Shown here piece after piece: positions 898 through 54,449 of a DNA stretch of 64,000 bases (position 1 is the stretch's first letter; the number at the start of each line of letters is the position of its first letter). The notes below the pieces were generated by a model. That model was not told where the DNA came from. It saw nothing but the letters and a program-made list of their open reading frames with translations, and did not search any database. The position numbers and the translations under genes are program-made. The stretch is taken from the IMG/VR virus record IMGVR_UViG_3300049001_000044, positions 62,001 through 126,000 of that record; one strand, 5' to 3'.

Positions 898-1027
898 TGG
901 TCGGGAATGATGGAATCGAACCATGGTTTCTTCTGTCCAACCGAAGAGTCCTAACACAAGTCGGTGTGTTACTAACTTGCTGAAAGTATCTTCGGCCAGG
1001 AGCGTTCTGCCATTGAACTAATTCCCG
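898..1027 (-). ncRNA. tRNA-Pro(TGG)-like RNA with ~55-nt structured insertion in the anticodon loop
   Basis: CGGGAAT/ATTCCCG-A-CCA acceptor, D and T arms intact; insert 941-995 closed by CCGAAGA/TCTTCGG. Confidence 0.75.
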
Positions 1028-9232: not shown

Positions 9233-9307
9233 GAGGTGCTCAGAGACCTCCGTATAGTTTGTAATGATTGTTATTGTGCATTTTGCACTGAGGTCTCTGA
9301 GCACCTC
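9233..9307. repeat. perfect 18-bp inverted repeat GAGGTGCTCAGAGACCTC (dispersed family)
   Basis: Arms 9233-9250 and 9290-9307. Confidence 0.9.
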
Positions 9308-22078: not shown

Positions 22079-22364
22079 CGGTCTTTTTACGACGCTTCTT
22101 CTTAGGAGGCGTCGTCACTATCTTGTTGAACAGTAAACGAGTGTCGTAAATGACGCCTCTATCCATCAGCACGTCCATGTGGCGTTGATCCAACTGGAAG
22201 TGGTTCTGATGCAGAAGAATGCCGTACTTTGACGCGGCAAAGTTGGCTGCCTGAATTGTGTCTACCCTTCCCCATTGATCGGAGAAGTTGTAGTAAAGCA
22301 GAAGCACGTCTATTTCTAGATCTGAGATATTATTATCGAAGGTGTTATTCTTGCTTAGGTCCAC
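22062..22364 (-). CDS. hypothetical protein
   Basis: ORF. Confidence 0.55.
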   Translation of the reverse strand: MDLSKNNTFDNNISDLEIDVLLLYYNFSDQWGRVDTIQAANFAASKYGILLHQNHFQLDQRHMDVLMDRGVIYDTRLLFNKIVTTPPKKKRRKKTDGKNT

Positions 22365-22403: not shown

Positions 22404-22604
22404 TTACTTCGGCGGGCGAGTAAAAATTACTTCGACCAGAGTCGAAGTGTCCTCACGATAATAAACCGAGAACCCAGCTGCAAGAGCATCGGCCTCGGGC
22501 GTACCAGTCACTGTAGTTGGATCATACGCTACAGTAACGACTACGGCCCCAGCTTCCGCCAGGGCCTGTAGATTCTTTTTCTGCGTTTCGGTAAAGTTAC
22601 GCAT
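22404..22604 (-). CDS. hypothetical protein
   Basis: ORF with RBS. Confidence 0.55.
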   Translation of the reverse strand: MRNFTETQKKNLQALAEAGAVVVTVAYDPTTVTGTPEADALAAGFSVYYREDTSTLVEVIFTRPPK

Positions 22605-23798: not shown

Positions 23799-24347
23799 AT
23801 GAACATCAAATTCAAGAAATACCTAGAGTTCGTTAACCTTGACGACCCTTCTGATGAGCAAATCAACGAACTGTTCGGCATCTTCAAGAACAATCAGAAG
23901 ATCGACAAGGTGAAAGCTGCTCGTGAAAAGCTGAAAGCGGACACTGCAAAGAAGGTGAATGATTGGCGCGCACAGAAAGCTGCCCAACAGCAAGGTGACG
24001 ACGACGAAGATACAGACATCCCGCAAGCGAAGAATGATCAACGTCGTCCTAACATGACTGCTCAAGCAGCACCGAAGGCAGCCGCTGCTGGTCGCGCAGC
24101 AGAAAGAGACTGGGTGAGCAACCTTGCTGAGGAACACCGCATAAAGACGGTCAAGGGCGAAGAAATGATCGCCATGGCAAAAGATAAGTACCCATTTGGG
24201 CCTGGCTTCAGTGATGAAGATCTGAAAGATGCGGTGACCATGGAAATTTGGGGCTCGTCGTTTGATGACCACGGTGAATGGACCGAATTCAAGCTTAAAG
24301 ATGCCAGTGGCAAACTTATCAAGAGAAAGCGCGTTGACGGGTATTAA
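23799..24347 (+). CDS. putative head-packaged protein (MNIKFKKYLE...INE)
   Basis: TAAATA at 23764-23769; Leu/Ile-X-Glu sites. Confidence 0.6.
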   Translation: MNIKFKKYLEFVNLDDPSDEQINELFGIFKNNQKIDKVKAAREKLKADTAKKVNDWRAQKAAQQQGDDDEDTDIPQAKNDQRRPNMTAQAAPKAAAAGRAAERDWVSNLAEEHRIKTVKGEEMIAMAKDKYPFGPGFSDEDLKDAVTMEIWGSSFDDHGEWTEFKLKDASGKLIKRKRVDGY

Positions 24348-24349
24348 GA

Positions 24350-24778
24350 ATGGCCGCTCATCGCACACCACCAAAGCCAGCATGGTACGACAGCGTTCCT
24401 GAAGGGACCTGTCGTTGGTGCAACAAGGAAGTTGGCTTGACTAGGACTGGCCGTCAAAGCAAGTCACGTTGGCACGCGAAATGTTTTGAGGAATATGAGC
24501 TGCTCTTCTTTGCTGGAGAAACGAGGAAGGCAGTTTGGAAGAGAGATTTTGGCAAGTGCGCAGAGTGCGGACATCAATGCGCTAGGAAGGGTGAAGATGT
24601 GTGGCACATGGACCACATCAAGCCGCTCATCGAAGCCAACGGTGATCTGTCTTATTGGCGTCTTCCTAACTTGCAAACTCTCTGTCAAGAGTGCCACATC
24701 AAGAAGACATCGGCTGAAGCAACTGAACGAGCGACTCGTAGGAGGCTCTTGAAGGAGGCAAAAGAAAAGGGAGCTTAA
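24350..24778 (+). CDS. HNH endonuclease
   Basis: CAEC..DHIKPL..NLQTLCQECH. Confidence 0.9.
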   Translation: MAAHRTPPKPAWYDSVPEGTCRWCNKEVGLTRTGRQSKSRWHAKCFEEYELLFFAGETRKAVWKRDFGKCAECGHQCARKGEDVWHMDHIKPLIEANGDLSYWRLPNLQTLCQECHIKKTSAEATERATRRRLLKEAKEKGA

Positions 24779-24788
24779 GCTCCCTTTT
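24766..24788. terminator. bidirectional terminator
   Basis: AAAAGGGAGCTTAAGCTCCCTTTT. Confidence 0.8.
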
Positions 24789-24790
24789 CT

Positions 24791-24907
24791 GATAATGTTG
24801 GTAGGATTCGAACCTACACTTGCAGTCATTTGATGAACAGTTGGGGTGTTTATTCCCTCTCCCAGTCTTAGTGGGACGCCTTGACCAATTTGGCGTTCAA
24901 CATTATC
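24791..24907 (-). ncRNA. tRNA-Leu(AAG)-like RNA with oversized variable region, no CCA
   Basis: 10-bp closing stem GATAATGTTG/CAACATTATC; D arm; TCCCA-CTAAGAC-TGGGA; GTAGG-TTCGAAT-CCTAC. Confidence 0.65.
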
Positions 24908-24941
24908 GCGAGGCTGCTAGTTATGCAGCATCGTTATCGAA

Positions 24942-25496
24942 TTAAGCTGCTTCCAGCTCTGCTTCAACCATCGTTTCGGTACCTTCGACTTGTGCTTCGA
25001 CTGCGATGCCGCTGCCTTCAGCTTCGGCTTCCGGCGCCGGATCTGCGAAGACTGCAGCGACCTTGCGGGTGGTAGTGGAAGCCTTGACGGTGGTCTTGGC
25101 CTCGGTTGCTTCAGCCTTGCGACCGCGAGGCAGCTTGGTCACGACGCCGCCGACTTCCTTGATGCGACCACCCAGGATCTGGTTCAGTTCCAGCAGGTGC
25201 TTTTTCAGCTGCTTGACGGTGATTTCCGGTTCGACGGTCTTCGCCGCTTCCAGCAGACGCTCTTCAGCTTTCGAGAAGAACTCCGGGTTGACGAAGTTGT
25301 AGTTGCGCGGGATTTCGAAACCTTGCGCGCCCAGGGTGGTGCCGACTTCGATTGCTACGCCCTTCCAGCTGTCGGCGTGATCGGCCGGGCGTGCTTCTTT
25401 CCAGAAGCCGGTTGCGATTTCCTGCAGCAGGACTTGTTGCAGAACAGCCTGTTGAGCGGCGGTCGCAACGAACAGAACTTTGGTGGTGGTCGACAT
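24942..25496 (-). CDS. hypothetical protein with Lys/Ala/Thr- and Glu-rich tail
   Basis: AGGAG RBS, promoter 25561-25594. Confidence 0.75.
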   Translation of the reverse strand: MSTTTKVLFVATAAQQAVLQQVLLQEIATGFWKEARPADHADSWKGVAIEVGTTLGAQGFEIPRNYNFVNPEFFSKAEERLLEAAKTVEPEITVKQLKKHLLELNQILGGRIKEVGGVVTKLPRGRKAEATEAKTTVKASTTTRKVAAVFADPAPEAEAEGSGIAVEAQVEGTETMVEAELEAA

Positions 25497-25595
25497 CTTC
25501 AAATCTCCTAAAAGAAAATACATCAAAATTTAATACGATCGTTTGTTTGATCGATGAGTTATTTTACTTTGCAACGTCATCATCAAAAACTGCAT

Positions 25596-25726
25596 TTGCT
25601 ACTAGTTAGGTGACTCTTTTGGTTGGCCTTCCCTCAACAGGCGAGGAGTCGAACCTCGCTATACCGACCTCTCAGCCGTCGCTGTGCCATTCGCGTTCTG
25701 TTTCAGAGTCACCTAACTAGTAGCAA
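25596..25726 (-). ncRNA. tRNA-like domain enclosed in a 22-bp perfect stem
   Basis: IR 25596-25617/25705-25726; T-arm GCGAGG-TTCGACT-CCTCGC; own promoter at 25741-25772. Confidence 0.65.
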
Positions 25727-25807
25727 CTGCTGATAGTGAAATTATAAGCTACTTGACACTGAATAAAAACTGATTATTTCCCCACTGTATCTTTTCGTTC
25801 TCATCAG

Positions 25808-25896
25808 CAGATGAGGCCCAGAGGTGTTGTGCAAAAGTGACAACAGCAAATACAACGAAGGGTCCCTAACACCACTGGGACCCTTCTGACACCTCT
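25808..25896. repeat. dispersed intergenic repeat cassette
   Basis: CAGATGAGGCCCAGAG plus GAAGGGTCCC/GGGACCCTTC hairpin. Confidence 0.75.
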
Positions 25897-25904
25897 AGCG
25901 ATAC

Positions 25905-26114
25905 TTAGAAGTCAACTTGTCTGACTTCCTTTACAGCTGCAGAAAATTCAACCTGCACTAGCATGCCCGCACGCAGATTATGGGTGTTCAAAGTCAGGTA
26001 AGTGTAGCTCATCCCAAACTCGTTCTCCATGTACACCTCATCATACTGGTCTGCCATGTGAGGTGCTGGCCAAGGTCTTACGGACTTGACCGTCATCTTC
26101 ACCCTGAAGCTCAA
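25905..26114 (-). CDS. hypothetical protein
   Basis: ORF coupled to telA. Confidence 0.5.
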   Translation of the reverse strand: MSFRVKMTVKSVRPWPAPHMADQYDEVYMENEFGMSYTYLTLNTHNLRAGMLVQVEFSAAVKEVRQVDF

Positions 26115-27238
26115 TTGGTGCCCCAGTTCTTCATCTCGAGACGGAGCTGCTCGCGGTTTGCAGAGATTTTCTGCGCATCAGCTTGGCGTTGGGCACGGCC
26201 TTGGGCTTCGATCTGCTTGACTTGGCCCAGGCGGTCGATGAGCTTGGCTTGGGTATACTCGAGCGTATCAGTATCTGCGACCGAGGAACGTTGCGCCAGT
26301 TGGGCGGTTTGAATCGAGCTCTCATGCATGAGGTCAGCACGCTTACGCATCAGATCGTTGTTGCGATCGGCGATGGCATTACCCAGCTTCGCACGATTGA
26401 GGTTCCTTGCTGCCTGCAGAGCCATGGTCAGCTGGCGTTTCCACAGAGGGAGGGTCACGTCGATGATGTCATTGAAGGAAGCAGTGGTGTCGAAGTTGTT
26501 CTTCTGCAGCGAGCGAATGTCTGGTGCATCCATCATGCCGATCTGAATCAGGCGCTCGAGGCGGTCGATCTGTCGCTCGATGCGCTCTTGGATGTTGGCC
26601 TCGTCATTGATGAGCTGGGCATGTTGCATTCGCTGCGTGTCGTCCATGTCCGTCTCCGGCACTTGACGGAGAGAGTTCACGTATGCGATTTGTCGCTGCA
26701 GCAGTTCTTGAAGATTCTCCACGTCATCCTTCATCGTGATGATCTCTTTGATGTTCTCCTGGTAGAGTTGCTCCAACCATTTGTTCTCCACCTGCATCTC
26801 GACCAGCTCTTTCTTCAGATCGTTCGCGATGCGTTCGACTTGCTGGTTGACGTCTTCGTACTGAGCGAGGACCTTCACTCGGGTTTGCTTGAAGAGGTTG
26901 GTGATCTTACCCACCAGACCAGGGTCGCCCTCTTCCAGCTTCGACATGTCCACGGTGGCAGTGAGCGAGAGGATGTCAGTGATGCCCTTACCCAAACCGC
27001 CAGTGTCACCCACCTTCACCTTGTTCAGTACTTGCTCGCTGATCTTATTGATCTTGCTCGTGCTGCCGCGGCCGATCTCTTCAATGTTGGCTGGGAGTTG
27101 GGGCTTCTGCACCAGGCCGTACGTGGGCTGAACTACCGGCAGATTCGCGGTAGGCTGGCTAATCGTCGCATTCAAGTTGATGGACGGGGTCTTTGCGATC
27201 GTCGGCTTTGCGCCAAACATTTTGCTGAAGTCGGTCAT
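26111..27238 (-). CDS. TelA/KlaB toxic-anion resistance family protein
   Basis: Coiled-coil protein with AP.IR..Q.NN and TLPLWK motifs. Confidence 0.8.
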   Translation of the reverse strand: MTDFSKMFGAKPTIAKTPSINLNATISQPTANLPVVQPTYGLVQKPQLPANIEEIGRGSTSKINKISEQVLNKVKVGDTGGLGKGITDILSLTATVDMSKLEEGDPGLVGKITNLFKQTRVKVLAQYEDVNQQVERIANDLKKELVEMQVENKWLEQLYQENIKEIITMKDDVENLQELLQRQIAYVNSLRQVPETDMDDTQRMQHAQLINDEANIQERIERQIDRLERLIQIGMMDAPDIRSLQKNNFDTTASFNDIIDVTLPLWKRQLTMALQAARNLNRAKLGNAIADRNNDLMRKRADLMHESSIQTAQLAQRSSVADTDTLEYTQAKLIDRLGQVKQIEAQGRAQRQADAQKISANREQLRLEMKNWGTN

Positions 27239-27993
27239 AGTGCGTTCCTTAATTCGATAGATTGCTTGGTGCCGTTCAAAACATCCAAGCACAACATTCG
27301 GTACATGGGAACAGTGGCGTTGAGTAGGTCGTCAACTTGATGCGGACGAGTCTTGATATCCATCGCCAGCTTTCTCACCTGTTCCACTCCTAGTGCCACA
27401 AGCTGCTGTTGGGTGTAGAGGGTGTGGCACCGCCTGTTAATTGCGTCCACCTCCAGATCGTCAGTGCAGTTGGGTTTTTTCTTCTCCAGATCTGCACCGG
27501 CTTTCGCCAACTGTTCAGCAAGGTATGAGGCCTGCTGCAGCATCTTCTCCACTTCCGCAATCTTGAAAGGATTGGGACGTTTGAAGCTGCGCAAGGTTGC
27601 TTCCACTTCAGCAATCACCGTGTCGACATAGGCGTCCATGTCGACTTGCGGCTCTTGTTTGAAGAAGCGGAAGATGGATTTTGAAGATGCTTGTTCGTTG
27701 TGGCGCAAGACATCTTCCGCCATCTCATGCAATTTCTGCTGAACCTCTGCAACGATGTCCACATCGTTCTTCACCAGTGCCTCGATCAAGTCCACGTGCT
27801 CCTTGACCTTCTCACTCAGGTCACGGCGCCAGTCCATGATATTGTTGCTGTTGCTGAAAGCATTCGAAGGAGAAGTGCGAACTACAGCAGGTGCTTGTGC
27901 TTTCGGCTTCTCAAACATCTTGCTGTAATCCACTTTCTTCTCCTTCGCTTTCGCAGCAGGTTGGTTTTCAAACATCCTGCTGTAATCTTTCAT
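27235..27993 (-). CDS. helical protein, TelA-like paralog/partner
   Basis: DYSKMF N-terminal motif shared with telA; TVPMY C-terminus resembles TLPLW. Confidence 0.6.
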   Translation of the reverse strand: MKDYSRMFENQPAAKAKEKKVDYSKMFEKPKAQAPAVVRTSPSNAFSNSNNIMDWRRDLSEKVKEHVDLIEALVKNDVDIVAEVQQKLHEMAEDVLRHNEQASSKSIFRFFKQEPQVDMDAYVDTVIAEVEATLRSFKRPNPFKIAEVEKMLQQASYLAEQLAKAGADLEKKKPNCTDDLEVDAINRRCHTLYTQQQLVALGVEQVRKLAMDIKTRPHQVDDLLNATVPMYRMLCLDVLNGTKQSIELRNAL

Positions 27994-28205
27994 CGCTGCC
28001 TAAAACACTGGTAGATGAAGGTGACCATCTTCTCTTCGACCCCCTCATCGCTTAACGAATCGATGAAGGCATCCGAGATGTGGCAGAATCTGCCCTTCGG
28101 CATCTTGAAGTCGGAAGGATGCTGGGAGCCGTGAGCCATGATGGTCTCCACGTTTCGTTCCCTTGCATCCTTCACCAACTTCTTGAAGAGCTCTTTGGCT
28201 TCCAT
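27990..28205 (-). CDS. hypothetical protein
   Basis: Coupled ORF. Confidence 0.55.
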   Translation of the reverse strand: MEAKELFKKLVKDARERNVETIMAHGSQHPSDFKMPKGRFCHISDAFIDSLSDEGVEEKMVTFIYQCFRQR

Positions 28206-28885
28206 TACTCGGTTTCGAAACCGTACAGGTGGAAGAATTCAGCCAGACCGTTCTCGAATCCTTGATTAACGGCTTTGACGGACCAAACACCGTTCTTTTT
28301 ACGGAGCTCAACGAAGAGCAGGCTGGTTGCCGAGTTACCGTCAGCGGTAGTGGCGTCGTCTTCCAGGTCGTAGCTGGCAAGACACTCATCCGTTTCGTTG
28401 TTGAACACCTTGATCCAAGAGTTGTGGACTTGGCCGAAGTTCTGGCGGCGAGCATGCGCTTCGTCGATGGTCACGATGACGTGGACGACGTTGATTTCTT
28501 CCGGCAGGCGATCAGTGAAGACCGTGATGATCTCGTCGGCACCATCACCAGCACCGTCACGGCTGTCGCCGCTGTGGATCATTGCGCAGTTCGGAACAGT
28601 CGGCTTGCCTTTCTTCGGCAGACCACTATCGATGAAGGTGGTCTTGTCGTCGCTAGTGCGCAGCATCGAGTTGTAGAAGAGAACGAATTCTTCGCTGTGA
28701 CCACGGCCGAACGGATACTCGGGTTCATCTTTGTCGACAAGACCGATCGCGCTGACGTCGAGGTCGAACTTCTGACCGGTCTGGAAGACTTGCGGGCTCC
28801 AACCTAGTTCCAGCCGAACTGCGGTGATTGCCGAACCATCGGCTTTCTGCATTTTCAGCTTGCTACCTTTGGTCATTTGCAACAT
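28205..28885 (-). CDS. terD: TerD-family stress protein
   Basis: LGW..FDLD.SA..FYN..HSGD.RDG.GDG.DE.I. Confidence 0.9.
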   Translation of the reverse strand: MLQMTKGSKLKMQKADGSAITAVRLELGWSPQVFQTGQKFDLDVSAIGLVDKDEPEYPFGRGHSEEFVLFYNSMLRTSDDKTTFIDSGLPKKGKPTVPNCAMIHSGDSRDGAGDGADEIITVFTDRLPEEINVVHVIVTIDEAHARRQNFGQVHNSWIKVFNNETDECLASYDLEDDATTADGNSATSLLFVELRKKNGVWSVKAVNQGFENGLAEFFHLYGFETE

Positions 28886-28975
28886 GGTATTTCCTTTCAA
28901 GATTTACGAAGGGGAGTAATTTCCCCTTCGTTTGAAACATGAGATATTCTACTATCGATTGATGCTCTGAAAAAC

Positions 28976-30079
28976 TTAAGTCAGAGTACCTGCTTCGTAT
29001 TTTACAGGTTCACCTTTATTACGTACCTTCAGCGAGTGGATGGCGGCGATCGAGATGATTACCAGGCTGCCACCTGCGGTTACTACTTCGCCGAGTTCGA
29101 TGCCAGCGGCAGAGAGGAACATGACGGCTACGAGGAAGCCAATCGCATAGAATGCGCCGTGTTCGAGGTAAGCCAGTTCATCCAACGCTTCCTTATCGAC
29201 CATGTACAAGGTGAGGGACCGTACGAACATTGCGCCGATACCCAGGCCCAGTGCGATGATGAGGAAGTTGTTCGTGATGGCGAAAGCTGCGATCACACCG
29301 TCGAAGGAGAAGGAAGCATCCACTACTTCCAGGTAGATGAAGGCACCCAGGCCGGTTTTCGCTGCTGCATTGTCATCGCCGAGGAAGGCGCCGATACCAT
29401 CAACCAAGATGTAGGCGACCAGGCCAACCAGGCCAGCAGTGAAGAAGTGAGTGGGCTCATGCATGAAGGGAGAGACGATCAGCAGGGTGACGATGGCAAC
29501 AGCTGCTTGAATCGATTCGATCTTGCCAATGGTGACGAAGTGTTTCTCGATGAAGCCGATCCAGTGATGGTCCTTCTCAGCATCGATGAAGAACTTCAGG
29601 AAGACCATCAGAAGGAAGATGCCACCGAAGGCCATGATCTGCGTGTGAGCACTGGTGATTGCCGCTTGGTACGCTTGAGGATCGAACAACGCCATGTAGA
29701 CGGAGGTACCCTTGAACAGCTCGACCCATGCAGCTCCATTGAAGACCGCGCCGATGTGATCCCAGTTAATCACTGAGTGGGCGCCCGTTGCGATGGAGAC
29801 GATTGCAATGGGGAAGACCAGTCGCATACCGAAGACTGCAATCGCCATACCCCAGGTGAGGAAGCGATGTCGCCATTTGTCGTCCATGTCCTTGAGGACG
29901 GTGGCATTGACGATTGCGTTATCGAAGGAGACGCAGGTTTCCAGAACACCCAGCATGAAAGCTGCGAACATGTACTGCATTGCGGTGGTGATGCCGCCGT
30001 ACATGAAGCCGATACCGCCTGAGAGAGCGATCGCAGCCAGTGCGAAGGCAATGGAGCCACCAAAATATTTCTTGATCAT
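28976..30079 (-). CDS. DUF475/TerC-related integral membrane protein
   Basis: LE..SFDNA..NA, YLEV.DASFSFDGVI, YLEHGA. Confidence 0.88.
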   Translation of the reverse strand: MIKKYFGGSIAFALAAIALSGGIGFMYGGITTAMQYMFAAFMLGVLETCVSFDNAIVNATVLKDMDDKWRHRFLTWGMAIAVFGMRLVFPIAIVSIATGAHSVINWDHIGAVFNGAAWVELFKGTSVYMALFDPQAYQAAITSAHTQIMAFGGIFLLMVFLKFFIDAEKDHHWIGFIEKHFVTIGKIESIQAAVAIVTLLIVSPFMHEPTHFFTAGLVGLVAYILVDGIGAFLGDDNAAAKTGLGAFIYLEVVDASFSFDGVIAAFAITNNFLIIALGLGIGAMFVRSLTLYMVDKEALDELAYLEHGAFYAIGFLVAVMFLSAAGIELGEVVTAGGSLVIISIAAIHSLKVRNKGEPVKYEAGTLT

Positions 30080-30097
30080 CTTGTTCTTTCTTTGAAG

Positions 30098-30805
30098 TTA
30101 AACAGCGGGTTGACGGGCGATCAGCCAGTCGCAGATTTCTTTCTGCAGGATTTGTTCGTACATCTCATCATCGCTGATTTTCAGATCATCGAAGTGGACG
30201 AAGCCAACGTTGTCGTACAGATCAGCAGCTTCTTGCATCAAGCCAAAGTCACGGACATTGCCAACGCCGATCAGCATGAAGTAGTCGTTTGGCGAACTCT
30301 GCACCAGCCGCTTGAACTCTGCGTGGTCACCCATGTCTTGGCCATCGCTGACGAAGAAGTGGACGTTCGGGTAGACTACTTCTTTCTTCGAGAACATCTT
30401 CGTGAAGAAGCCTTTCGCCTTGGCGACCGGGTTGGCTGCGAGTGCAGTGCTGACCGCCTTGGCGTAGTTGGTACCACCGCGCCAGGTGCCGGCTTGGGTT
30501 GCTTCAGGAATGAAGCGTGCCTGAATGTAGGTGTAGATTTCCGGCTCGGTGACATCGCCGTGTTTGTGAGCTTTGTCGCTGAAGGAAGTCACTTCCAGCA
30601 GACCATCTGCGTCGAGGCGGAGAGCCACGGCCATCAGACGTTCAGTCAGCTCTTGCATATCGCTGCGAGGACCATGATAGAAGGGCATTGCCGATCCGCT
30701 GACGTCAAGCAGGAATTTGATCTGTGCCTTCAGATTATCGGGCACGTTGTGCTTCTTCAGTTGCAAAGCAACCTTACCGACTCGTTTACTCATCTCAAGT
30801 GCCAT
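30098..30805 (-). CDS. vWA domain protein (TerF C-terminal type)
   Basis: LLDVSGS, GGTNYA, FVSDG, DNVGF. Confidence 0.8.
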   Translation of the reverse strand: MALEMSKRVGKVALQLKKHNVPDNLKAQIKFLLDVSGSAMPFYHGPRSDMQELTERLMAVALRLDADGLLEVTSFSDKAHKHGDVTEPEIYTYIQARFIPEATQAGTWRGGTNYAKAVSTALAANPVAKAKGFFTKMFSKKEVVYPNVHFFVSDGQDMGDHAEFKRLVQSSPNDYFMLIGVGNVRDFGLMQEAADLYDNVGFVHFDDLKISDDEMYEQILQKEICDWLIARQPAV

Positions 30806-45892: not shown

Positions 45893-46174
45893 TGGGGACT
45901 CCTTAAAGGAGGTATTTATGCTGGCCGGTTCTCACTCAGCCATTTTGCCTTCTGGGCCATTCCCTCAGGATCCTTTTCCACCTGCTCACGGGCAAACTGA
46001 TCCACAAAGTCCACCTCCCAGGGTTCCAACTTTCTTTCAAAATCCTGCTCGTGGATGAAGATGAGTTCTTGAAGGAGCTCGGCTGCGATCGTTTCTTTCC
46101 GCCGCCATCCTGCCCGTGCCACACTGTTGATATGCAACACGATGAGGACGGACAGGATGATTGCCTGACCACGA

Positions 46175-46390
46175 TCAGTGAACACGGCTTTTCCCCAGTG
46201 CTTTGTCGGCCATAATGATGGAGTCGATCGAGGACTGCAAGTTTTCGTACACCGACTGCAGGTGACTGCGCTGGACATCATCGCCCGTCTCCGAGATCAT
46301 CTGCTCCACCCGCTGTTTCTGCACGTGCAGATCGATCGCCAAGATGCTGTAGGCATTACTTTTCCAATTACGATTCGTGAGACTCATCAC
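46175..46390 (-). CDS. hypothetical protein
   Basis: ORF with RBS. Confidence 0.55.
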   Translation of the reverse strand: MMSLTNRNWKSNAYSILAIDLHVQKQRVEQMISETGDDVQRSHLQSVYENLQSSIDSIIMADKALGKSRVH

Positions 46391-46443
46391 TTCCTCCCAG
46401 GAAAAGGGGGCCCGAAATCCTTTCCATTCCGGGCCACTTGACT

Positions 46444-46791
46444 TTAGACGCGCAGCTTATCCATGTTGTTGCCAGCCGCGATGTATGCCTTCACCCATTT
46501 CGGGCGGGCACCCTTGCCTCCCCAGGTTTCTTGGGGGTTGTCGGGATTGCGGTACATCACCGCTGCACCCGGTGCGCGGTAGGTGAGGATTTCCGAGAGG
46601 GGCATGCCGATGTTGGCCGCGATCTGCATGATCTGCTCCACGGCCTGCTGGCGTTCGCGCTGCTCCACTTCCTTCGTCTTTGCGGCTACTCGCTCGGCCA
46701 GCTTTTTCAGATCCGCCGCACTGAGGTTGTCCAGCTGCGGGGTGATCTGCTCGAGGGCCACAGCCGAGAATTTGTTGTCTGCTTCTGCCAT
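46444..46791 (-). CDS. hns: H-NS family nucleoid protein
   Basis: YRNPDNPQETWGGKGARPKW DNA-binding motif; N-terminal coiled coil. Confidence 0.85.
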   Translation of the reverse strand: MAEADNKFSAVALEQITPQLDNLSAADLKKLAERVAAKTKEVEQRERQQAVEQIMQIAANIGMPLSEILTYRAPGAAVMYRNPDNPQETWGGKGARPKWVKAYIAAGNNMDKLRV

Positions 46792-46874
46792 TTTTGTTTC
46801 TCCTATTTCTACTTCTTCATCATCAAACCCAGAGTTTCCTCCGGGCACTCATCATCCGCGATTTGCGGGATTCC

Positions 46875-47264
46875 TTAGGCCTTGAACGGCTTGCCGTTGC
46901 GGAAGACCACTTCCAGGGTCGGTTGGGTCAGGCCCACGGTCCACTTGGTGGTGGGGAACTGCGGGGTGCCGTCCGAGTTGCACGAGGGGCCCTGCATGCA
47001 ATCACCGTTCCGGTTCATGTGGTCGAACTTGAAGTAGTTGTAGCCCGCATTTTTGCCGCGGCCCGACTTGTAGAAGCGAATGACATCGCCCACCTGGAAT
47101 TTCCCCTCCACCACTGCAGCCGTGGCGACAGTTTGGCGGCTAATCCGATTCTTGGCCTTGTAAATCACACTCAGTTGTTTGTTCAACTGGAGGAGTTCCT
47201 CCGCGGTCAGGTTATGCAGGCCAGCCATCATTTCAGCGAGAGTAAGTTTTTTAGTTTCCATCAT
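46875..47264 (-). CDS. hypothetical early protein
   Basis: Follows early-type promoter 47297-47326. Confidence 0.7.
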   Translation of the reverse strand: MMETKKLTLAEMMAGLHNLTAEELLQLNKQLSVIYKAKNRISRQTVATAAVVEGKFQVGDVIRFYKSGRGKNAGYNYFKFDHMNRNGDCMQGPSCNSDGTPQFPTTKWTVGLTQPTLEVVFRNGKPFKA

Positions 47265-47418
47265 CGTTTCCTTCAGTTTGTTTCGTCGATAAGGCTATAA
47301 TACCATGGTGCGTCAGGATGTAAAACAAAAGATTGTAACAAATTGTAACGATGAATCCTAAACCTGGCGCTATATATAGCAGACCTTGGTAAATACGCGA
47401 TCTAATATGGAGGCCACC

Positions 47419-47886
47419 TTGGCGAAGAAAAGAATCCCAGAACTTAAGATCGAGACTATTAACGGTCGAGACAACTACATCTACCTTTCCCTAGTAGAGT
47501 ACAAGCGAGAGAATTACCTATGCATCATCGACAACATTAAGTCCGCAGAAATTGGTGCGTACGTCTTGGACTATGCTGGCCAGAGCGGTATTGACGTTGT
47601 GGAATTTTTGGAGTTGGCTACCCTATGGTTCTACTCCAAGTCCGACGAGTACCCACTGTCCGTGGCCTTGGCACAACAAGGCAAGACCGAATGGGCATCA
47701 GGTATGTACCGAACTTTTGACACCACCTACGTCTCACGAATCGTTGGGCAGGGGTTCTCGTACGACAGAATGGAAAAATCGAAGGTGCGTAGACGTAGAG
47801 TGGTTGCTCTACCGGCGGGCATCGAAGTACGATTGAAGAAGGATGGACGGAAACTAGAGCCAGGACAACTTATCCCGGAGGAATGA
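47419..47886 (+). CDS. hypothetical late protein
   Basis: GTAAATA at 47389-47395; GGAGG RBS then TTG. Confidence 0.65.
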   Translation: MAKKRIPELKIETINGRDNYIYLSLVEYKRENYLCIIDNIKSAEIGAYVLDYAGQSGIDVVEFLELATLWFYSKSDEYPLSVALAQQGKTEWASGMYRTFDTTYVSRIVGQGFSYDRMEKSKVRRRRVVALPAGIEVRLKKDGRKLEPGQLIPEE

Positions 47887-53356: not shown

Positions 53357-54449
53357 TCAATCGTTTGATACGAGCCTTACGCTCTTTGTTCATGGCCACG
53401 CCGATGGCCGGGCCTTCCAGGTGCGTGTAGGGTTCGCTCGTTACTCGACGAACCTCTTGCAGCATTTCCTTCAATTCGTCAGGCCATACCGCAGTCACGT
53501 GGCCGGAATTGTTCAGCACTTCGACAGCTAAGATCACGTCCTTGATGAGCGTGTCATCTTGCCATGCTTTCGTCGTCTTGAACAGTTCGAAGATGGCTTC
53601 GACTTCCAGATCACCCATCCTGTCGATGCGCTGAACAGCTTGATGGATTTGGGTGACGTGGGTGGGCAGAGCATGCACACGACCAGGCAGATCATTCTTC
53701 GCAGTCAACGCGACGAAGTAAGCGAACTGAATCTCGTCCCTGACATAGCGAAGAGTCCTTGCCAGCTTGTCCATCTTGGAGATGACTCGCACGGCTTCAT
53801 GCTGATTGCCCCACACCTCTTTGAAGAACTTGACCCTATTGAAGACGCCAAAGCTGTGCAAGACGTGGAACATCAAGTTAGCCCTGCCGTCTTCAACTGC
53901 TTTGCTGATCTCCAGCCAGTAGCGTTCGTAGGGGATGTGGTCAAGTTCACCCGACTCAACCACGCTGATCGCCAGCTTTTGGGTCTCCTCTGCAATGGAG
54001 AAGTCCTCATAGCGCGCAGCAAATCGTGCGAGGCGAACAACACGCAGAGGGTCTTCAGCAAAAGCTGGGGACACATGCCTCAGCACCTTGTTCTTCAGAT
54101 CATCCAAACCACCGAAGTAGTCGATGATGTTGCCATGAACGCTATCCTTTGCGAGGGCGTTGATGGTGAGGTCACGGCGAGAGAGGTCTTCTTCCAACGT
54201 CACGTCGGTACCGAAGTCGCAGGAGAAACCGTGATAGCCAACACCCGTCTTTCGTTCACGGCGCGCCATTGCAATCTGACTACCATCTGCAGGGTCGATG
54301 AAGACGGGGAAGTCAGCACCGACCGGATCACCGAAGCTTGCTTGCAGTTGTTCGAACGTGCAGCCAACAGCTACGTAATCCAAATCATTTGTTGGTCGGC
54401 CCAACAGCTCATCACGAACTGCACCTCCAACCAAATAGACTTTCTTCAT
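53343..54449 (-). CDS. cca: tRNA nucleotidyltransferase (CCA-adding enzyme, class II)
   Basis: YLVGGAVRD.LLG..DLD; DLSRRDLTINA; EDPLRV.R.ARF. Confidence 0.92.
   Translation of the reverse strand: MKKVYLVGGAVRDELLGRPTNDLDYVAVGCTFEQLQASFGDPVGADFPVFIDPADGSQIAMARRERKTGVGYHGFSCDFGTDVTLEEDLSRRDLTINALAKDSVHGNIIDYFGGLDDLKNKVLRHVSPAFAEDPLRVVRLARFAARYEDFSIAEETQKLAISVVESGELDHIPYERYWLEISKAVEDGRANLMFHVLHSFGVFNRVKFFKEVWGNQHEAVRVISKMDKLARTLRYVRDEIQFAYFVALTAKNDLPGRVHALPTHVTQIHQAVQRIDRMGDLEVEAIFELFKTTKAWQDDTLIKDVILAVEVLNNSGHVTAVWPDELKEMLQEVRRVTSEPYTHLEGPAIGVAMNKERKARIKRLIAVF

What the first reader, a model, noticed from the sequence alone, without database searches (positions are those of the whole stretch)
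25596..25772. Promoter-driven small RNA: tRNA-like core locked in a 22-bp perfect duplex
Seen: its own CAGTTTTT-class promoter, a 22-bp inverted repeat, and inside it AACAG/CTGTT, a D-like segment, CGAC-GGCTGAGAG-GTCG and a perfect T arm. Together with the 24791 element it brackets gene 24942-25496 on both sides. Inference: an RNase III-processed or dsRNA/tRNA decoy RNA, and possibly a ribonucleoprotein with the enclosed gene product.
Basis: partly seen in the sequence, partly recalled or inferred. Interest (0 to 1): 0.65.

Follow-up and report, generated by a model that had tools for sequence, protein, structure and literature searches.

The report
Hairpin-locked tRNA-like small RNA gene
A 343-kb soil jumbo phage carries a compact, self-contained gene for a roughly 150-nt RNA whose ends pair into a perfect 22-bp helix around a tRNA-style T arm; it is not a working tRNA and most resembles the Y RNAs that partner Ro60, a protein this phage also encodes, but no relative or expression data confirm this.

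Summary
A 22-bp perfect inverted repeat (25596-25617 / 25705-25726) is the longest in the 343-kb phage genome. It encloses an 87-nt core with a canonical T arm. On the minus strand a genome-wide promoter type sits 3-7 nt before the helix, and a U5 tract sits 2 nt after it. The unit is therefore a tight promoter-hairpin-terminator of about 150 nt.

It is not a tRNA: the Rfam tRNA model and ARAGORN both miss it, and apart from the T arm and a 5-bp closing helix the core resembles tRNAs no better than shuffled sequence.

None of 12 homologous loci has a flanking tRNA-like element.

New context:
- The phage encodes a bona fide Ro60.
- The same genome holds three other long-stem T-arm RNAs.
- The T arm plus two bases (22 nt) is identical to a Y-RNA-array unit beside rsr in Mesorhizobium.
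- A CGCGAAUG motif lies where Y RNAs carry their Ro60 motif.

Against the Y-RNA reading: formal Y-RNA models match only the T arm, the element lies 40 kb from Ro60, and it is absent from 23 related records. Best reading: a Y-RNA-like tRNA mimic, confidence about 0.3.

The parts
25741..25772 (-). Promoter P1 of the small RNA: -35-like CAGTTTTTATTCA (25772-25760) and -10 TATAAT (25746-25741). Predicted start near 25737-25734.
   Evidence: Promoter class is 39 hits, all on the minus strand, against 2.8 in shuffles. The start position is inferred from the usual 7-nt spacing.
25705..25730 (-). 5' strand of the terminal helix: GCA (25730-25728), a mismatched G, then the 22-nt arm UUGCUACUAGUUAGGUGACUCU (25726-25705).
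25698..25702 (-). AACAG, the 5' strand of the 5-bp acceptor-like helix.
   Evidence: Read directly. It pairs with 25636-25640 and would stack on the T stem.
25688..25695 (-). CGCGAAUG. It matches the Y-RNA Ro60 motif GNCGAAN0-1G at 5 of 6 specified positions. GCGAAUG is identical to the Rhizobiales Y-RNA-like units.
   Evidence: Sequence. Motif from PMC4201824. Units.
25665..25681 (-). Hairpin CGAC-GGCUGAGAG-GUCG (4 bp, 9-nt loop). It sits where a tRNA anticodon arm or a YrlA 'V' stem-loop would sit.
   Evidence: The minimum-energy fold prefers an overlapping CAGC/GCUG hairpin, so this stem is not secure.
25641..25659 (-). T arm GCGAGG-UUCGACU-CCUCGC (6-bp stem, canonical T loop).
   Evidence: 16.7 bits to the T-arm part of model R2. 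The 20-mer is identical in Y-RNA-array units beside rsr.
25636..25640 (-). CUGUU, the 3' strand of the acceptor-like helix.
25618..25635 (-). 18-nt unpaired 3' segment GAGGGAAGGCCAACCAAA between the core and the helix. Its GCCA could pair with UGGC of the D-like region.
   Evidence: The pairing is inference only.
25592..25617 (-). 3' strand of the terminal helix: the 22-nt arm AGAGUCACCUAACUAGUAGCAA (25617-25596), a mismatched A, then UGC (25594-25592).
25585..25589 (-). U5 tract 2 nt after the helix, giving the geometry of an intrinsic terminator. It overlaps the -35 element of the next promoter.
   Evidence: The consensus terminator scan did not list it because its loop limit is 3-8 nt. Termination is inferred.
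25561..25592 (-). Promoter P2 of gene 24942-25496 (CAGTTTTTG 25592-25584, TAAAAT 25566-25561). This is context and not part of the RNA.
   Evidence: Homologous genes in relatives have one promoter of the same type.

Best explanation
This is an autonomous small-RNA gene on the minus strand. Transcription starts near 25737-25734 from a phage promoter. It most likely ends at the U5 tract 25589-25585, giving an RNA of about 150 nt.

The RNA's two ends zip into a 25-bp helix, of which 22 bp are perfect. The helix clamps an 87-nt module. That module holds a 5-bp helix stacked on a canonical T arm, a small hairpin, a CGCGAAUG motif on the 5' side, and an 18-nt single strand on the 3' side.

The RNA does not decode. 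I think it most likely works as a Y-RNA-type tRNA mimic. In that reading the terminal helix gives stability and a handle. The CGAAUG-bearing 5' side and the T arm are protein-binding surfaces, and the likeliest partner is the phage's own Ro60. Its D-like, hairpin, T order matches Deinococcus Yrn1 as PMC4201824 describes it, not YrlA.

Unless a protein covers the helix, host RNase III should trim it.

Shown here: the sequence features, the promoter class, the fold stability, Ro60 in the genome, and identity of the T arm to Y-RNA-array units. Inferred: transcription, termination, Ro60 binding and RNase III cleavage.
For: - Gene-like packaging. The promoter class gives 39 hits against 2.8 expected, all on one strand. 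The helix begins 3-7 nt after the predicted start, and U5 lies 2 nt after it. The fold has z = -6.9.
- It is the longest perfect inverted repeat in the genome.
- The phage encodes Ro60 with vWA_Ro60 186 bits and TROVE 121 bits.
- Y RNAs are defined by a long 5'/3' stem, a large internal loop, a GNCGAA-type motif and, in bacteria, a T arm. In Yrn1 the long stem takes the acceptor position (PMC4201824). A Thermus phage Ro60 binds phage RNAs with a 5'-3' stem and a CGAA motif (PMC12135203).
- The element has CGCGAAUG 9 nt inside the helix on the 5' side.
- Of 43 exact genome matches to the 20-nt T arm, the three in Alphaproteobacteria all share the same unit type. In the two loci examined that unit lies inside a tandem array of YrlA hits: 47-51 bits for the best two or three hits, plus weaker ones of 27-29 bits, all under Rfam's cut-off of 69.
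- A Ro60 gene lies directly upstream of that array in two of the three loci. Those units also begin GCGGCGAAUGCC.
- Three other RNAs with a 20-24-bp stem around a T arm lie in the same genome. One is conserved in a second Ro60-encoding phage with a fully covarying stem.
Against: - Rfam YrlA gives no hit at E <= 10.
- A model of the 5' halves of 11 Rhizobiales Y-RNA-like units aligns only to the T arm (16.7 bits). That is no better than ordinary tRNAs, which reach 21 bits.
- The motif fails the first G of GNCGAAN0-1G. A CGAAUG in 40 nt has a chance of about 0.01-0.05.
- The element lies 40 kb from Ro60, whereas nearly all known bacterial and phage Y RNAs lie within 4 kb (PMC4201824).
- The helix is perfect, without the bulged helix that Ro60 binds in animal Y RNAs.
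- A model of the element finds nothing in 23 related records. These include two near-complete Ro60-encoding genomes.
- Those phages have a better-placed candidate partner: a conserved structured leader of about 400 nt directly upstream of Ro60, with GNCGAA-loop hairpins in relatives.
- There are no RNA data. Only the source soil metagenome holds the DNA.
Confidence: 0.3

Rival explanations
1. An RNase III-gated tRNA mimic or decoy unrelated to Ro60. The RNA is transcribed as above and host RNase III cuts the perfect helix. The released stub-ended T-arm module then binds or titrates some tRNA-recognising factor. Candidates are RNase P, TruB, the phage's own CCA-adding enzyme, or a host tRNA-targeting defence nuclease. 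Alternatively the caged form is a stable store.
For: - A perfect helix of 22-25 bp is the length RNase III needs (established knowledge).
- The only comparable repeat in the genome is a 21-bp perfect helix at G000:210539-210641. It directly extends the acceptor stem of a good tRNA-Pro(UGG) cloverleaf that lacks CCA. 'Caging' of tRNA-shaped RNAs therefore recurs here.
- A third Ro60-encoding phage (G010) has three elements with 17-23-bp stems and inserts of about 100 nt in its tRNA cluster.
- The phage encodes a CCA-adding/PolyA_pol family enzyme and more than 52 tRNAs.
Against: - The phage has no RNase III and the host is unknown.
- The core lacks a credible anticodon arm to bait an anticodon nuclease. 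It has a 4-bp stem, a 9-nt loop and no U33.
- There is no conservation and no RNA data.
- Zero G-U pairs in 46 pairs across the two perfect helices is unexpected for purely RNA-level selection. The conserved sister family tolerates about 10% G-U.
Confidence: 0.25
2. A junction relic with at most a structural role. A decayed tRNA-type gene and a palindrome were left at the boundary between a strain-specific Ter island and a conserved gene. They now act mainly as a terminator or insulator between the island and gene 24942.
For: - The element lies exactly between the Ter island's terminator (25857-25886) and the promoter of the conserved gene. The island carries TelA, TerD, TerC/DUF475 and vWA-TerF at 26111-30805 and is absent from relatives.
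- The other flank of gene 24942 also carries a strain-specific insertion: the tRNA-like element plus an HNH endonuclease.
- The element is an orphan.
- The core matches the phage tRNAs no better than shuffled sequence (score 12 against 9.3 +/- 1.7).
Against: - A relic would not be expected to keep a full consensus promoter placed 3-7 nt from the helix, an unbroken 22/22 helix and an intact 6-bp T arm at the same time.
- The Ter operon already has its own terminator, and gene 24942 has its own promoter.
Confidence: 0.2
3. A DNA-level element. The perfect repeat would be the pair of terminal inverted repeats of a miniature mobile element, a recombinase or endonuclease site, or a cruciform or origin structure.
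For: - The repeat is perfectly Watson-Crick with no G-U pairs, so it is equally stable on both strands.
- An HNH endonuclease gene lies 820 bp away.
- The location is at an insertion boundary.
Against: - There is a single copy in the genome.
- No target-site duplication flanks it. The flanks are CTGCAT and CTGCTG.
- The sister 21-bp repeat has an unrelated sequence and simply continues a tRNA acceptor stem, which is an RNA-level logic.
- Promoter, T-arm orientation and U tract all point to the minus-strand RNA.
- An 87-bp spacer does not fit known recombinase or protelomerase sites (general knowledge).
Confidence: 0.05
4. A precursor of a functional decoding tRNA, released from a leader-trailer duplex by RNase III and RNase P and then given CCA by the phage enzyme.
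For: - The inner 71 nt are in tRNA register: a 7-nt acceptor strand, a 17-nt anticodon-arm equivalent, a 5-nt variable loop and a 17-nt T arm.
- The phage has a CCA-adding family enzyme.
- The sister element at 210573 is a real tRNA-Pro in the same kind of cage.
Against: - There is no hit to Rfam tRNA at E <= 10 in the region or at E <= 1 genome-wide.
- ARAGORN finds nothing, with or without introns.
- Acceptor pairs 1-72 and 7-66 are mismatched, there is no credible D stem, the loop is 9 nt without U33, and there is no CCA.
Confidence: 0.03
5. This RNA and the 24793-24904 tRNA-like RNA assemble with the protein of gene 24942-25496.
For: - The three are adjacent.
- The protein has a conserved domain of about 115 aa followed by a disordered basic tail.
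Against: - Twelve homologous loci lack both RNAs.
- The gene is conserved, whereas both RNAs sit in strain-specific insertions.
- The protein has no RNA-binding family or fold match.
Confidence: 0.03

Closest known systems
Deinococcus radiodurans Yrn1 (Ro60/Rsr-bound Y RNA)
   Same: Both have a long stem formed by the 5' and 3' ends and a large internal module with a T-arm-like stem-loop. In both, a small hairpin sits in the anticodon-arm position, so the long stem takes the place of the acceptor stem (as described in PMC4201824). A Ro60 gene is present in the same genome.
   Different: Yrn1's stem carries the conserved Ro60-binding helix, whereas this helix is perfect and unrelated in sequence. 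Yrn1 lies beside rsr, whereas this element is 40 kb away. Binding was not tested.
YrlA / YrlB (Rfam RF02553) and the Y-RNA arrays beside rsr in Rhizobiales
   Same: The T arm plus two following bases (22 nt) is identical to the Mesorhizobium unit, and 21 nt to the two Microvirga units. GCGAAUG is identical to their Ro60-motif region, and the order is the same: motif, hairpin, T arm. Like YrlB, the element has the motif and a T arm without a full tRNA-like domain.
   Different: There is no RF02553 hit. My model of the unit 5' halves aligns to the T arm only. The element lacks the second stem, the ACUACAG junction (it has CACAG), the acceptor-like stem-loop and the D arm. It adds a 25-bp outer helix and the AACAG/CUGUU helix.
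Thermus phage phiLo Yrl1/Yrl2, bound by phage Ro60 (PMC12135203)
   Same: Both are phage-encoded RNAs with a 5'-3' stem and an internal loop carrying a CGAA motif, in a phage that encodes Ro60.
   Different: The phiLo RNAs lie directly upstream of the Ro60 gene and their binding was shown by EMSA and cryo-EM. Here the position directly upstream of Ro60 is taken by a different conserved leader of about 400 nt, and nothing has been tested.
tRNA precursors and rRNA operons with leader-trailer duplexes cut by RNase III; T4 'species 1' stable RNA
   Same: A long terminal duplex encloses a structured RNA. The sister element at G000:210539-210641 is literally a tRNA-Pro with a 21-bp acceptor-plus-leader/trailer helix.
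   Different: The T4 comparison rests on my memory of 1970s papers and was not checked; the one literature search I aimed at it was rejected by the tool for a too-short term. The core here is not a tRNA. No processing data exist.

Membership tests
tRNA (Rfam RF00005) | Cloverleaf scoring at or above 29 bits, or called by a tRNA finder. | tested here: not met
   No hit at E <= 10 in 24700-25950. No hit at E <= 1 genome-wide. ARAGORN finds nothing with or without introns.
tRNA (Rfam RF00005) | T arm with a 5-bp stem and a UUCRANY loop. | tested here: met
   GCGAGG-UUCGACU-CCUCGC at 25659-25641.
tRNA (Rfam RF00005) | 7-bp acceptor stem, discriminator base, CCA or a free 3' end; 7-nt anticodon loop with U33; D stem. 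| tested here: not met
   Five of 7 acceptor pairs form. The 3' side runs on into an 18-nt strand and the 22-bp helix. The hairpin has a 4-bp stem and a 9-nt loop. No stable D stem exists. Similarity to 109 phage tRNAs is at shuffle level.
YrlA (Rfam RF02553) | Match to the covariance model, with T arm, acceptor-like stem-loop and D arm in that order. | tested here: not met
   No hit at E <= 10. The order here is D-like, hairpin, T arm.
Bacterial/phage Y RNA (general) | Long stem formed by the 5' and 3' ends plus a large internal loop, 80-130 nt. | tested here: met
   A 25-bp terminal helix and an 87-nt internal module. At about 150 nt it is somewhat long.
Bacterial/phage Y RNA (general) | GNCGAAN0-1G / CGAA motif on the 5' side. 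| tested here: inconclusive
   CGCGAAUG at 25695-25688 matches 5 of 6 specified positions. GCGAAUG is identical to the Rhizobiales units. The chance of CGAAUG in 40 nt is about 0.01-0.05.
Bacterial/phage Y RNA (general) | A Ro60 orthologue in the genome. | tested here: met
   G000:46070-47680(-), with vWA_Ro60 186 bits and TROVE 121 bits.
Bacterial/phage Y RNA (general) | Encoded within about 4 kb of Ro60 on the same strand. | tested here: not met
   The strand is the same, but the element lies about 40 kb away (G000:87592-87730 against 46070-47680). Criterion from PMC4201824.
Bacterial/phage Y RNA (general) | Sequence and structure homology to known Y-RNA 5' halves. | tested here: not met
   Model R2, built from 11 Rhizobiales units, aligns positions 43-60 (the T arm) only at 16.7 bits. 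tRNAs reach 21 bits.
Bacterial/phage Y RNA (general) | Binds Ro60. | not testable with these tools
   No RNA-protein prediction or assay is available.
RNase III substrate | About two turns (20 bp or more) of uninterrupted dsRNA. | tested here: met
   22 perfect bp, or 25 with one mismatch. Cleavage itself cannot be tested. The phage has no RNase III.
Miniature inverted-repeat mobile element | Multiple copies sharing terminal repeats, and target-site duplication. | tested here: not met
   The genome holds only the element itself, plus the match of its own arms to each other. None in 23 relatives. The flanks CTGCAT and CTGCTG are not a duplication.

The most novel reading that the evidence does not exclude
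Ro60-encoding jumbo phages may carry a previously undescribed class of 'caged' tRNA mimics. These would be tRNA-shaped or T-arm-bearing RNAs whose acceptor end is clamped in a helix of about 21-24 bp. This genome has four of them, including a bona fide tRNA-Pro. This element would be an acceptor-locked Y RNA that tethers phage Ro60, or that is released on demand by RNase III. It may have been built from a captured host Y-RNA unit.
Probability: 0.12. Interest if true: 0.8.

Novelty: new variant of a known kind. Interest (0 to 1): 0.5.

Why it matters
Phage-encoded Ro60 has only just begun to be studied, and what it does during infection is open. One Thermus phage has had its Ro60 and RNA partners characterised biochemically. 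If this RNA binds Ro60, three things would follow:
- Phage Y RNAs need not lie beside Ro60.
- They can take a Yrn1-like, acceptor-locked form.
- Jumbo phages may field several tRNA mimics at once.

If it is instead an RNase III-gated decoy, it would add a new way for phages to manipulate tRNA-recognising enzymes or tRNA-targeting defences.

Either way the element gives a compact construct of about 150 nt that can be tested in vitro against a defined protein. If it is a relic, the value lies only in the surrounding RNA repertoire of this phage group.

Tried and rejected
- Sequence relatives. Megablast and blastn against 50,697 phage records gave only chance hits of 30 nt or less. An exact 24-mer scan of IMG/VR gave none. 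BLAST in five related records gave chance hits only. A covariance model of the element (R1) searched in 24 records found only the element itself.
- Synteny through gene 24942. Seven IMG/VR loci and five metagenome loci were found, and none has the element. Synteny through TelA found no relatives.
- Expression. Only the source soil metagenome holds the DNA, and there are no RNA runs. Laying contigs confirmed the sequence only.
- Function of gene 24942. Pfam, PHROGs, Atlas features, an AlphaFold model (pLDDT 66.5; residues 1-110 confident) and Foldseek against PDB and Atlas all came back empty.
- Y RNA beside the phage Ro60. No Rfam family was found in the G000 Ro60 locus (about 1.4 kb upstream and 0.5 kb downstream, E <= 10) or within about 3 kb of Ro60 in 20 related loci (gathering cut-offs). 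No T arm or long repeat lies there.
- Homology to Y-RNA 5' halves. The model matched only the T arm.
- Considered and dropped. Retron ncRNA: no Pfam family other than an HNH endonuclease in the flanking genes, so no reverse transcriptase. tmRNA: no G3-U70 pair and no tag frame; the 18-codon frame from 25690 has no ribosome-binding site and is expected by chance. 6S-like RNA: no apical helix. CRISPR-repeat mimic: no repeat similarity seen. Protelomerase or recombinase site: the 87-bp spacer does not fit.
- One literature search was rejected for a too-short term, and two reviews were not held in the library.

Full report
WHERE IT IS. The window is G000:62001-126000 of a 343,229-bp IMG/VR phage record with direct terminal repeats, estimated 100% complete. 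Only the source soil metagenome holds this DNA. A second assembler's 324,809-nt contig from that sample is identical over 24500-26500. Nearly all genes and all 52 ARAGORN tRNAs are on the minus strand.

The arms 25596-25617 and 25705-25726 form a 22/22 Watson-Crick repeat around an 87-nt spacer. The pairing extends by 3 bp across one mismatch. The minus-strand RNA folds at -65.6 kcal/mol with z = -6.9. Genome-wide this is the longest perfect inverted repeat with a 20-300 nt spacer, and a shuffled genome gave none of 13 bp or more.

[CT]AGTTT-N18-24-TAnAAT occurs 39 times, all on the minus strand, against 2.8 in shuffles. The element's copy puts the predicted start 3-7 nt before the helix. A U5 tract follows the helix after 2 nt and doubles as the -35 element of the next promoter, which drives gene 24942. 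The unit is therefore promoter, about 140 nt of structure, then a terminator-like end. That is the packaging of a dedicated small-RNA gene. Transcription and termination are inferred, not shown.

WHAT THE CORE IS AND IS NOT. The core holds four features:
- a canonical T arm at 25659-25641;
- a 5-bp helix AACAG/CUGUU that would stack on the T arm;
- a hairpin with a 4-bp stem and a 9-nt loop;
- an 18-nt unpaired 3' strand.

The 71 inner nucleotides keep tRNA register. Even so, Rfam tRNA gives no hit at E <= 10 or at E <= 1 genome-wide. ARAGORN finds nothing. Global alignment to 109 tRNAs of this phage and a relative scores 12, against 9.3 +/- 1.7 for shuffled cores. It is not a decoding tRNA. 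Only the T arm and the closing helix are tRNA-like.

THE NEIGHBOURHOOD.
- Upstream on the minus strand lies a Ter island: vWA-TerF, TerC/DUF475, TerD and TelA at 30805-26111, with its own terminator at 25886-25857.
- Downstream lies gene 24942-25496 (184 aa, no known family).
- Next comes a tRNA-like gene at 24904-24793. It scores 46 bits to Rfam tRNA and has a 39-nt variable-region insert, a 10-bp acceptor stem and no CCA. A terminator follows it.
- After that come a convergent HNH endonuclease (24350-24778, plus strand), a further 186-aa ORF (23823-24383, minus strand, no known family) and then a conserved DDAH-like gene.

Gene 24942 is conserved in 12 other loci at 48-65% identity. Each has one promoter of the same type and no T arm or long repeat on either side. 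In one relative (L007) the DDAH-like gene follows directly. The Ter island and the tRNA-like/HNH block are insertions specific to this genome. The protein's model (residues 1-110 confident, basic disordered tail) matches nothing.

SISTER ELEMENTS. The second-longest perfect repeat in the genome is G000:210539-210641 (21 bp, 61-nt spacer). It encloses a good tRNA-Pro(UGG) cloverleaf whose acceptor stem simply runs on for 14 more pairs, and it has no CCA.

Two further minus-strand elements enclose T arms.
- G000:210184-210284 has a 20-bp stem with a 2x2 internal loop.
- G000:211403-211551 has a 24-bp stem with G-U pairs and one mismatch, plus its own promoter.

The second of these is conserved in a related complete phage at G002:353870-354016. 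There almost every pair of the stem has changed while pairing is kept, and the mismatch stays at the same place. This is clear RNA-level covariation for that family. A third Ro60-encoding phage (G010) has three non-homologous elements with 17-23-bp stems and inserts of about 100 nt in its tRNA cluster.

Long helices clamping structured RNAs, several of them with a T arm, are therefore a recurring theme in this phage group. My element is the only one that lies outside a tRNA cluster. Its sequence is an orphan: model R1 found nothing in 23 related records.

THE Ro60 LINK. Long stem plus T arm is the bacterial Y-RNA architecture, so I searched the genome for TROVE. It encodes a bona fide Ro60 at G000:46070-47680, with vWA_Ro60 at 186 bits and TROVE at 121 bits. 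It has no RtcB and no RNase III. It does have a CCA-adding-family enzyme.

The literature gives the comparison points.
- Y RNAs have a long 5'/3' stem, a large internal loop, a GNCGAAN0-1G motif and a T arm.
- In Deinococcus Yrn1 the long stem takes the acceptor position.
- Nearly all known examples lie within 4 kb of Ro60 (PMC4201824).
- A Thermus phage Ro60 binds two phage RNAs with a 5'-3' stem and a CGAA motif (PMC12135203).

The element has CGCGAAUG at 25695-25688.

An exact scan of 185,579 species genomes for the 20-nt T arm gave 43 hits. Most were in Actinomycetes, in an RNA I did not identify. The three hits in Alphaproteobacteria share one unit type. In the two loci examined that unit sits inside a tandem array of YrlA hits: 47-51 bits for the best two or three, plus weaker ones of 27-29 bits, all under Rfam's cut-off of 69. 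A Ro60 gene lies directly upstream of that array in Mesorhizobium retamae and Microvirga solisilvae. Those units begin GCGGCGAAUGCC and, in Mesorhizobium, share 22 consecutive nucleotides with the element. Relatives of this phage carry permuted tmRNAs of the alphaproteobacterial kind, so such bacteria are plausible hosts.

WHY CONFIDENCE STAYS LOW.
- A model of the 5' halves of 11 such units aligns to the T arm only. It scores 16.7 bits, below several ordinary tRNAs.
- Rfam YrlA does not match.
- The motif misses its first G.
- The helix has no bulge.
- The gene is 40 kb from Ro60.
- Two near-complete Ro60-encoding relatives lack the element.
- At least 13 of the 15 Ro60 loci examined share a conserved, structured leader of about 400 nt directly upstream of the gene. 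Its hairpins carry GNCGAA loops in relatives, which makes it a better-placed candidate partner.
- Neither perfect helix has a G-U pair (0 of 46 pairs), unlike the conserved sister family. This points to youth, a DNA-level constraint or an unusually strict dsRNA requirement. I cannot tell which.

VERDICT. The element is a real, compact small-RNA gene candidate, with probability of about 0.7 that it is transcribed as a unit. It is a T-arm-bearing module locked in a perfect helix.
- Most likely it is a Y-RNA-like tRNA mimic whose partner is the phage Ro60 (0.3).
- Nearly as likely it is an RNase III-gated mimic or decoy for another tRNA-recognising factor (0.25).
- It may instead be a junction relic that serves mainly as an insulator (0.2).

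It is a new variant of a known kind, not a new category. Without relatives or RNA data the mechanism remains inference.

Noticed in passing
G000:46070-47680 (-), outside the window; leader G000:47681-48090: The phage encodes a full Ro60 (TROVE + vWA_Ro60). At least 13 of the 15 Ro60 loci examined in related phage contigs share a conserved, structured leader of about 400 nt directly upstream. Its motifs include GUGUAGG, CUGAAAUCUCCGAC and UUGCUGC..GCAGCCG, with GNCGAA-loop hairpins in relatives. No Rfam family matches it.
   Followed up: partly
G000:58604-58727, 211621-211744, 211806-211944, 211403-211551; G002:353870-354016; Ro60 leaders in L045-L066: An RNA module, CUUUGUUG..AACCG-N9-10-UGGUUAYC, occurs 8-11 times per genome on the transcribed strand in three phages, against 0-2 on the other strand. 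It sits inside the anticodon region of several CCA-ended tRNA-like genes, in the covarying 24-bp-stem RNA, and in the Ro60 leaders. The GUUG/CAAC and AACC/GGUU pairings overlap, which suggests alternative folds. Its function is unknown.
   Followed up: partly
window 901-1027 (-), promoter near 1086: A tRNA-like gene (Rfam 36.3 bits) has acceptor, D and T arms and a CCA end. Its anticodon arm is replaced by an extended helix of about 70 nt.
   Followed up: partly
G000:210539-210641 (-): A good tRNA-Pro(UGG) cloverleaf has its acceptor stem continuing as a 21-bp perfect helix, with no CCA. It is the second-longest perfect inverted repeat in the genome.
   Followed up: partly
window 24793-24904 (-): A tRNA (46 bits) has the anticodon loop CUAAGAC (AAG), a 39-nt insertion in the variable region, a 10-bp acceptor stem and no CCA. 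It is co-transcribed after gene 24942 and is followed by a terminator. A convergent HNH endonuclease gene ends inside that terminator.
   Followed up: partly
G000:195112-195264; G002:333454-333621; G010:67560-67635: tRNA(CUA) amber-suppressor genes are present in all three large genomes: two in G000, two in G002 and one in G010. This raises the possibility of TAG recoding, which I did not examine, and I applied no alternative code.
   Followed up: no
L004:5011-5487, L006:5352-5759, L010:4221-4562, G002:14953-15296, G010:70496-70867: Relatives carry a permuted tmRNA with tags such as ANDSVYEDLRLAA and ANDDNYMELRLAA. In the three fragment loci examined it lies between homologues of window genes 22416-22598 and 22119-22295. 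This genome has none there or elsewhere.
   Followed up: partly
G000:210695-210753 (-): A sub-threshold hammerhead type III match (32.5 bits, cut-off 48.5, E = 0.001) lies inside the tRNA cluster.
   Followed up: no
window 9233-9307; G000:131877-131951, 330555-330637: Three copies of an inverted-repeat family, GAGGTGCTCAGAG(A)CCTC, have 39-49-nt spacers. One overlaps a promoter hit.
   Followed up: no
window 26111-30805 (-): A Ter-type island carries TelA, TerD, TerC/DUF475 and vWA-TerF. It is absent from the related contigs at this position.
   Followed up: partly
window 54078-54440 (-): A gene of the CCA-adding enzyme / poly(A) polymerase family (PolyA_pol head domain 79 bits, 390-aa frame).
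   Followed up: no
L086, L087, L090-L093, L096-L102, L104-L105 and L110-L127 (Micromonosporaceae, Jiangellaceae and other Actinomycetes): About 33 actinomycete genomes share a conserved RNA-like sequence ending in the same T arm...GGGGCGGACCGAGGG..CCCCGCGCC..GCGAGGUUCGACUCCUCGCCCGGCC, in many of them followed by a CCA end. In the two loci tested Rfam did not call it as tRNA, tmRNA or YrlA at E <= 0.1.
   Followed up: no
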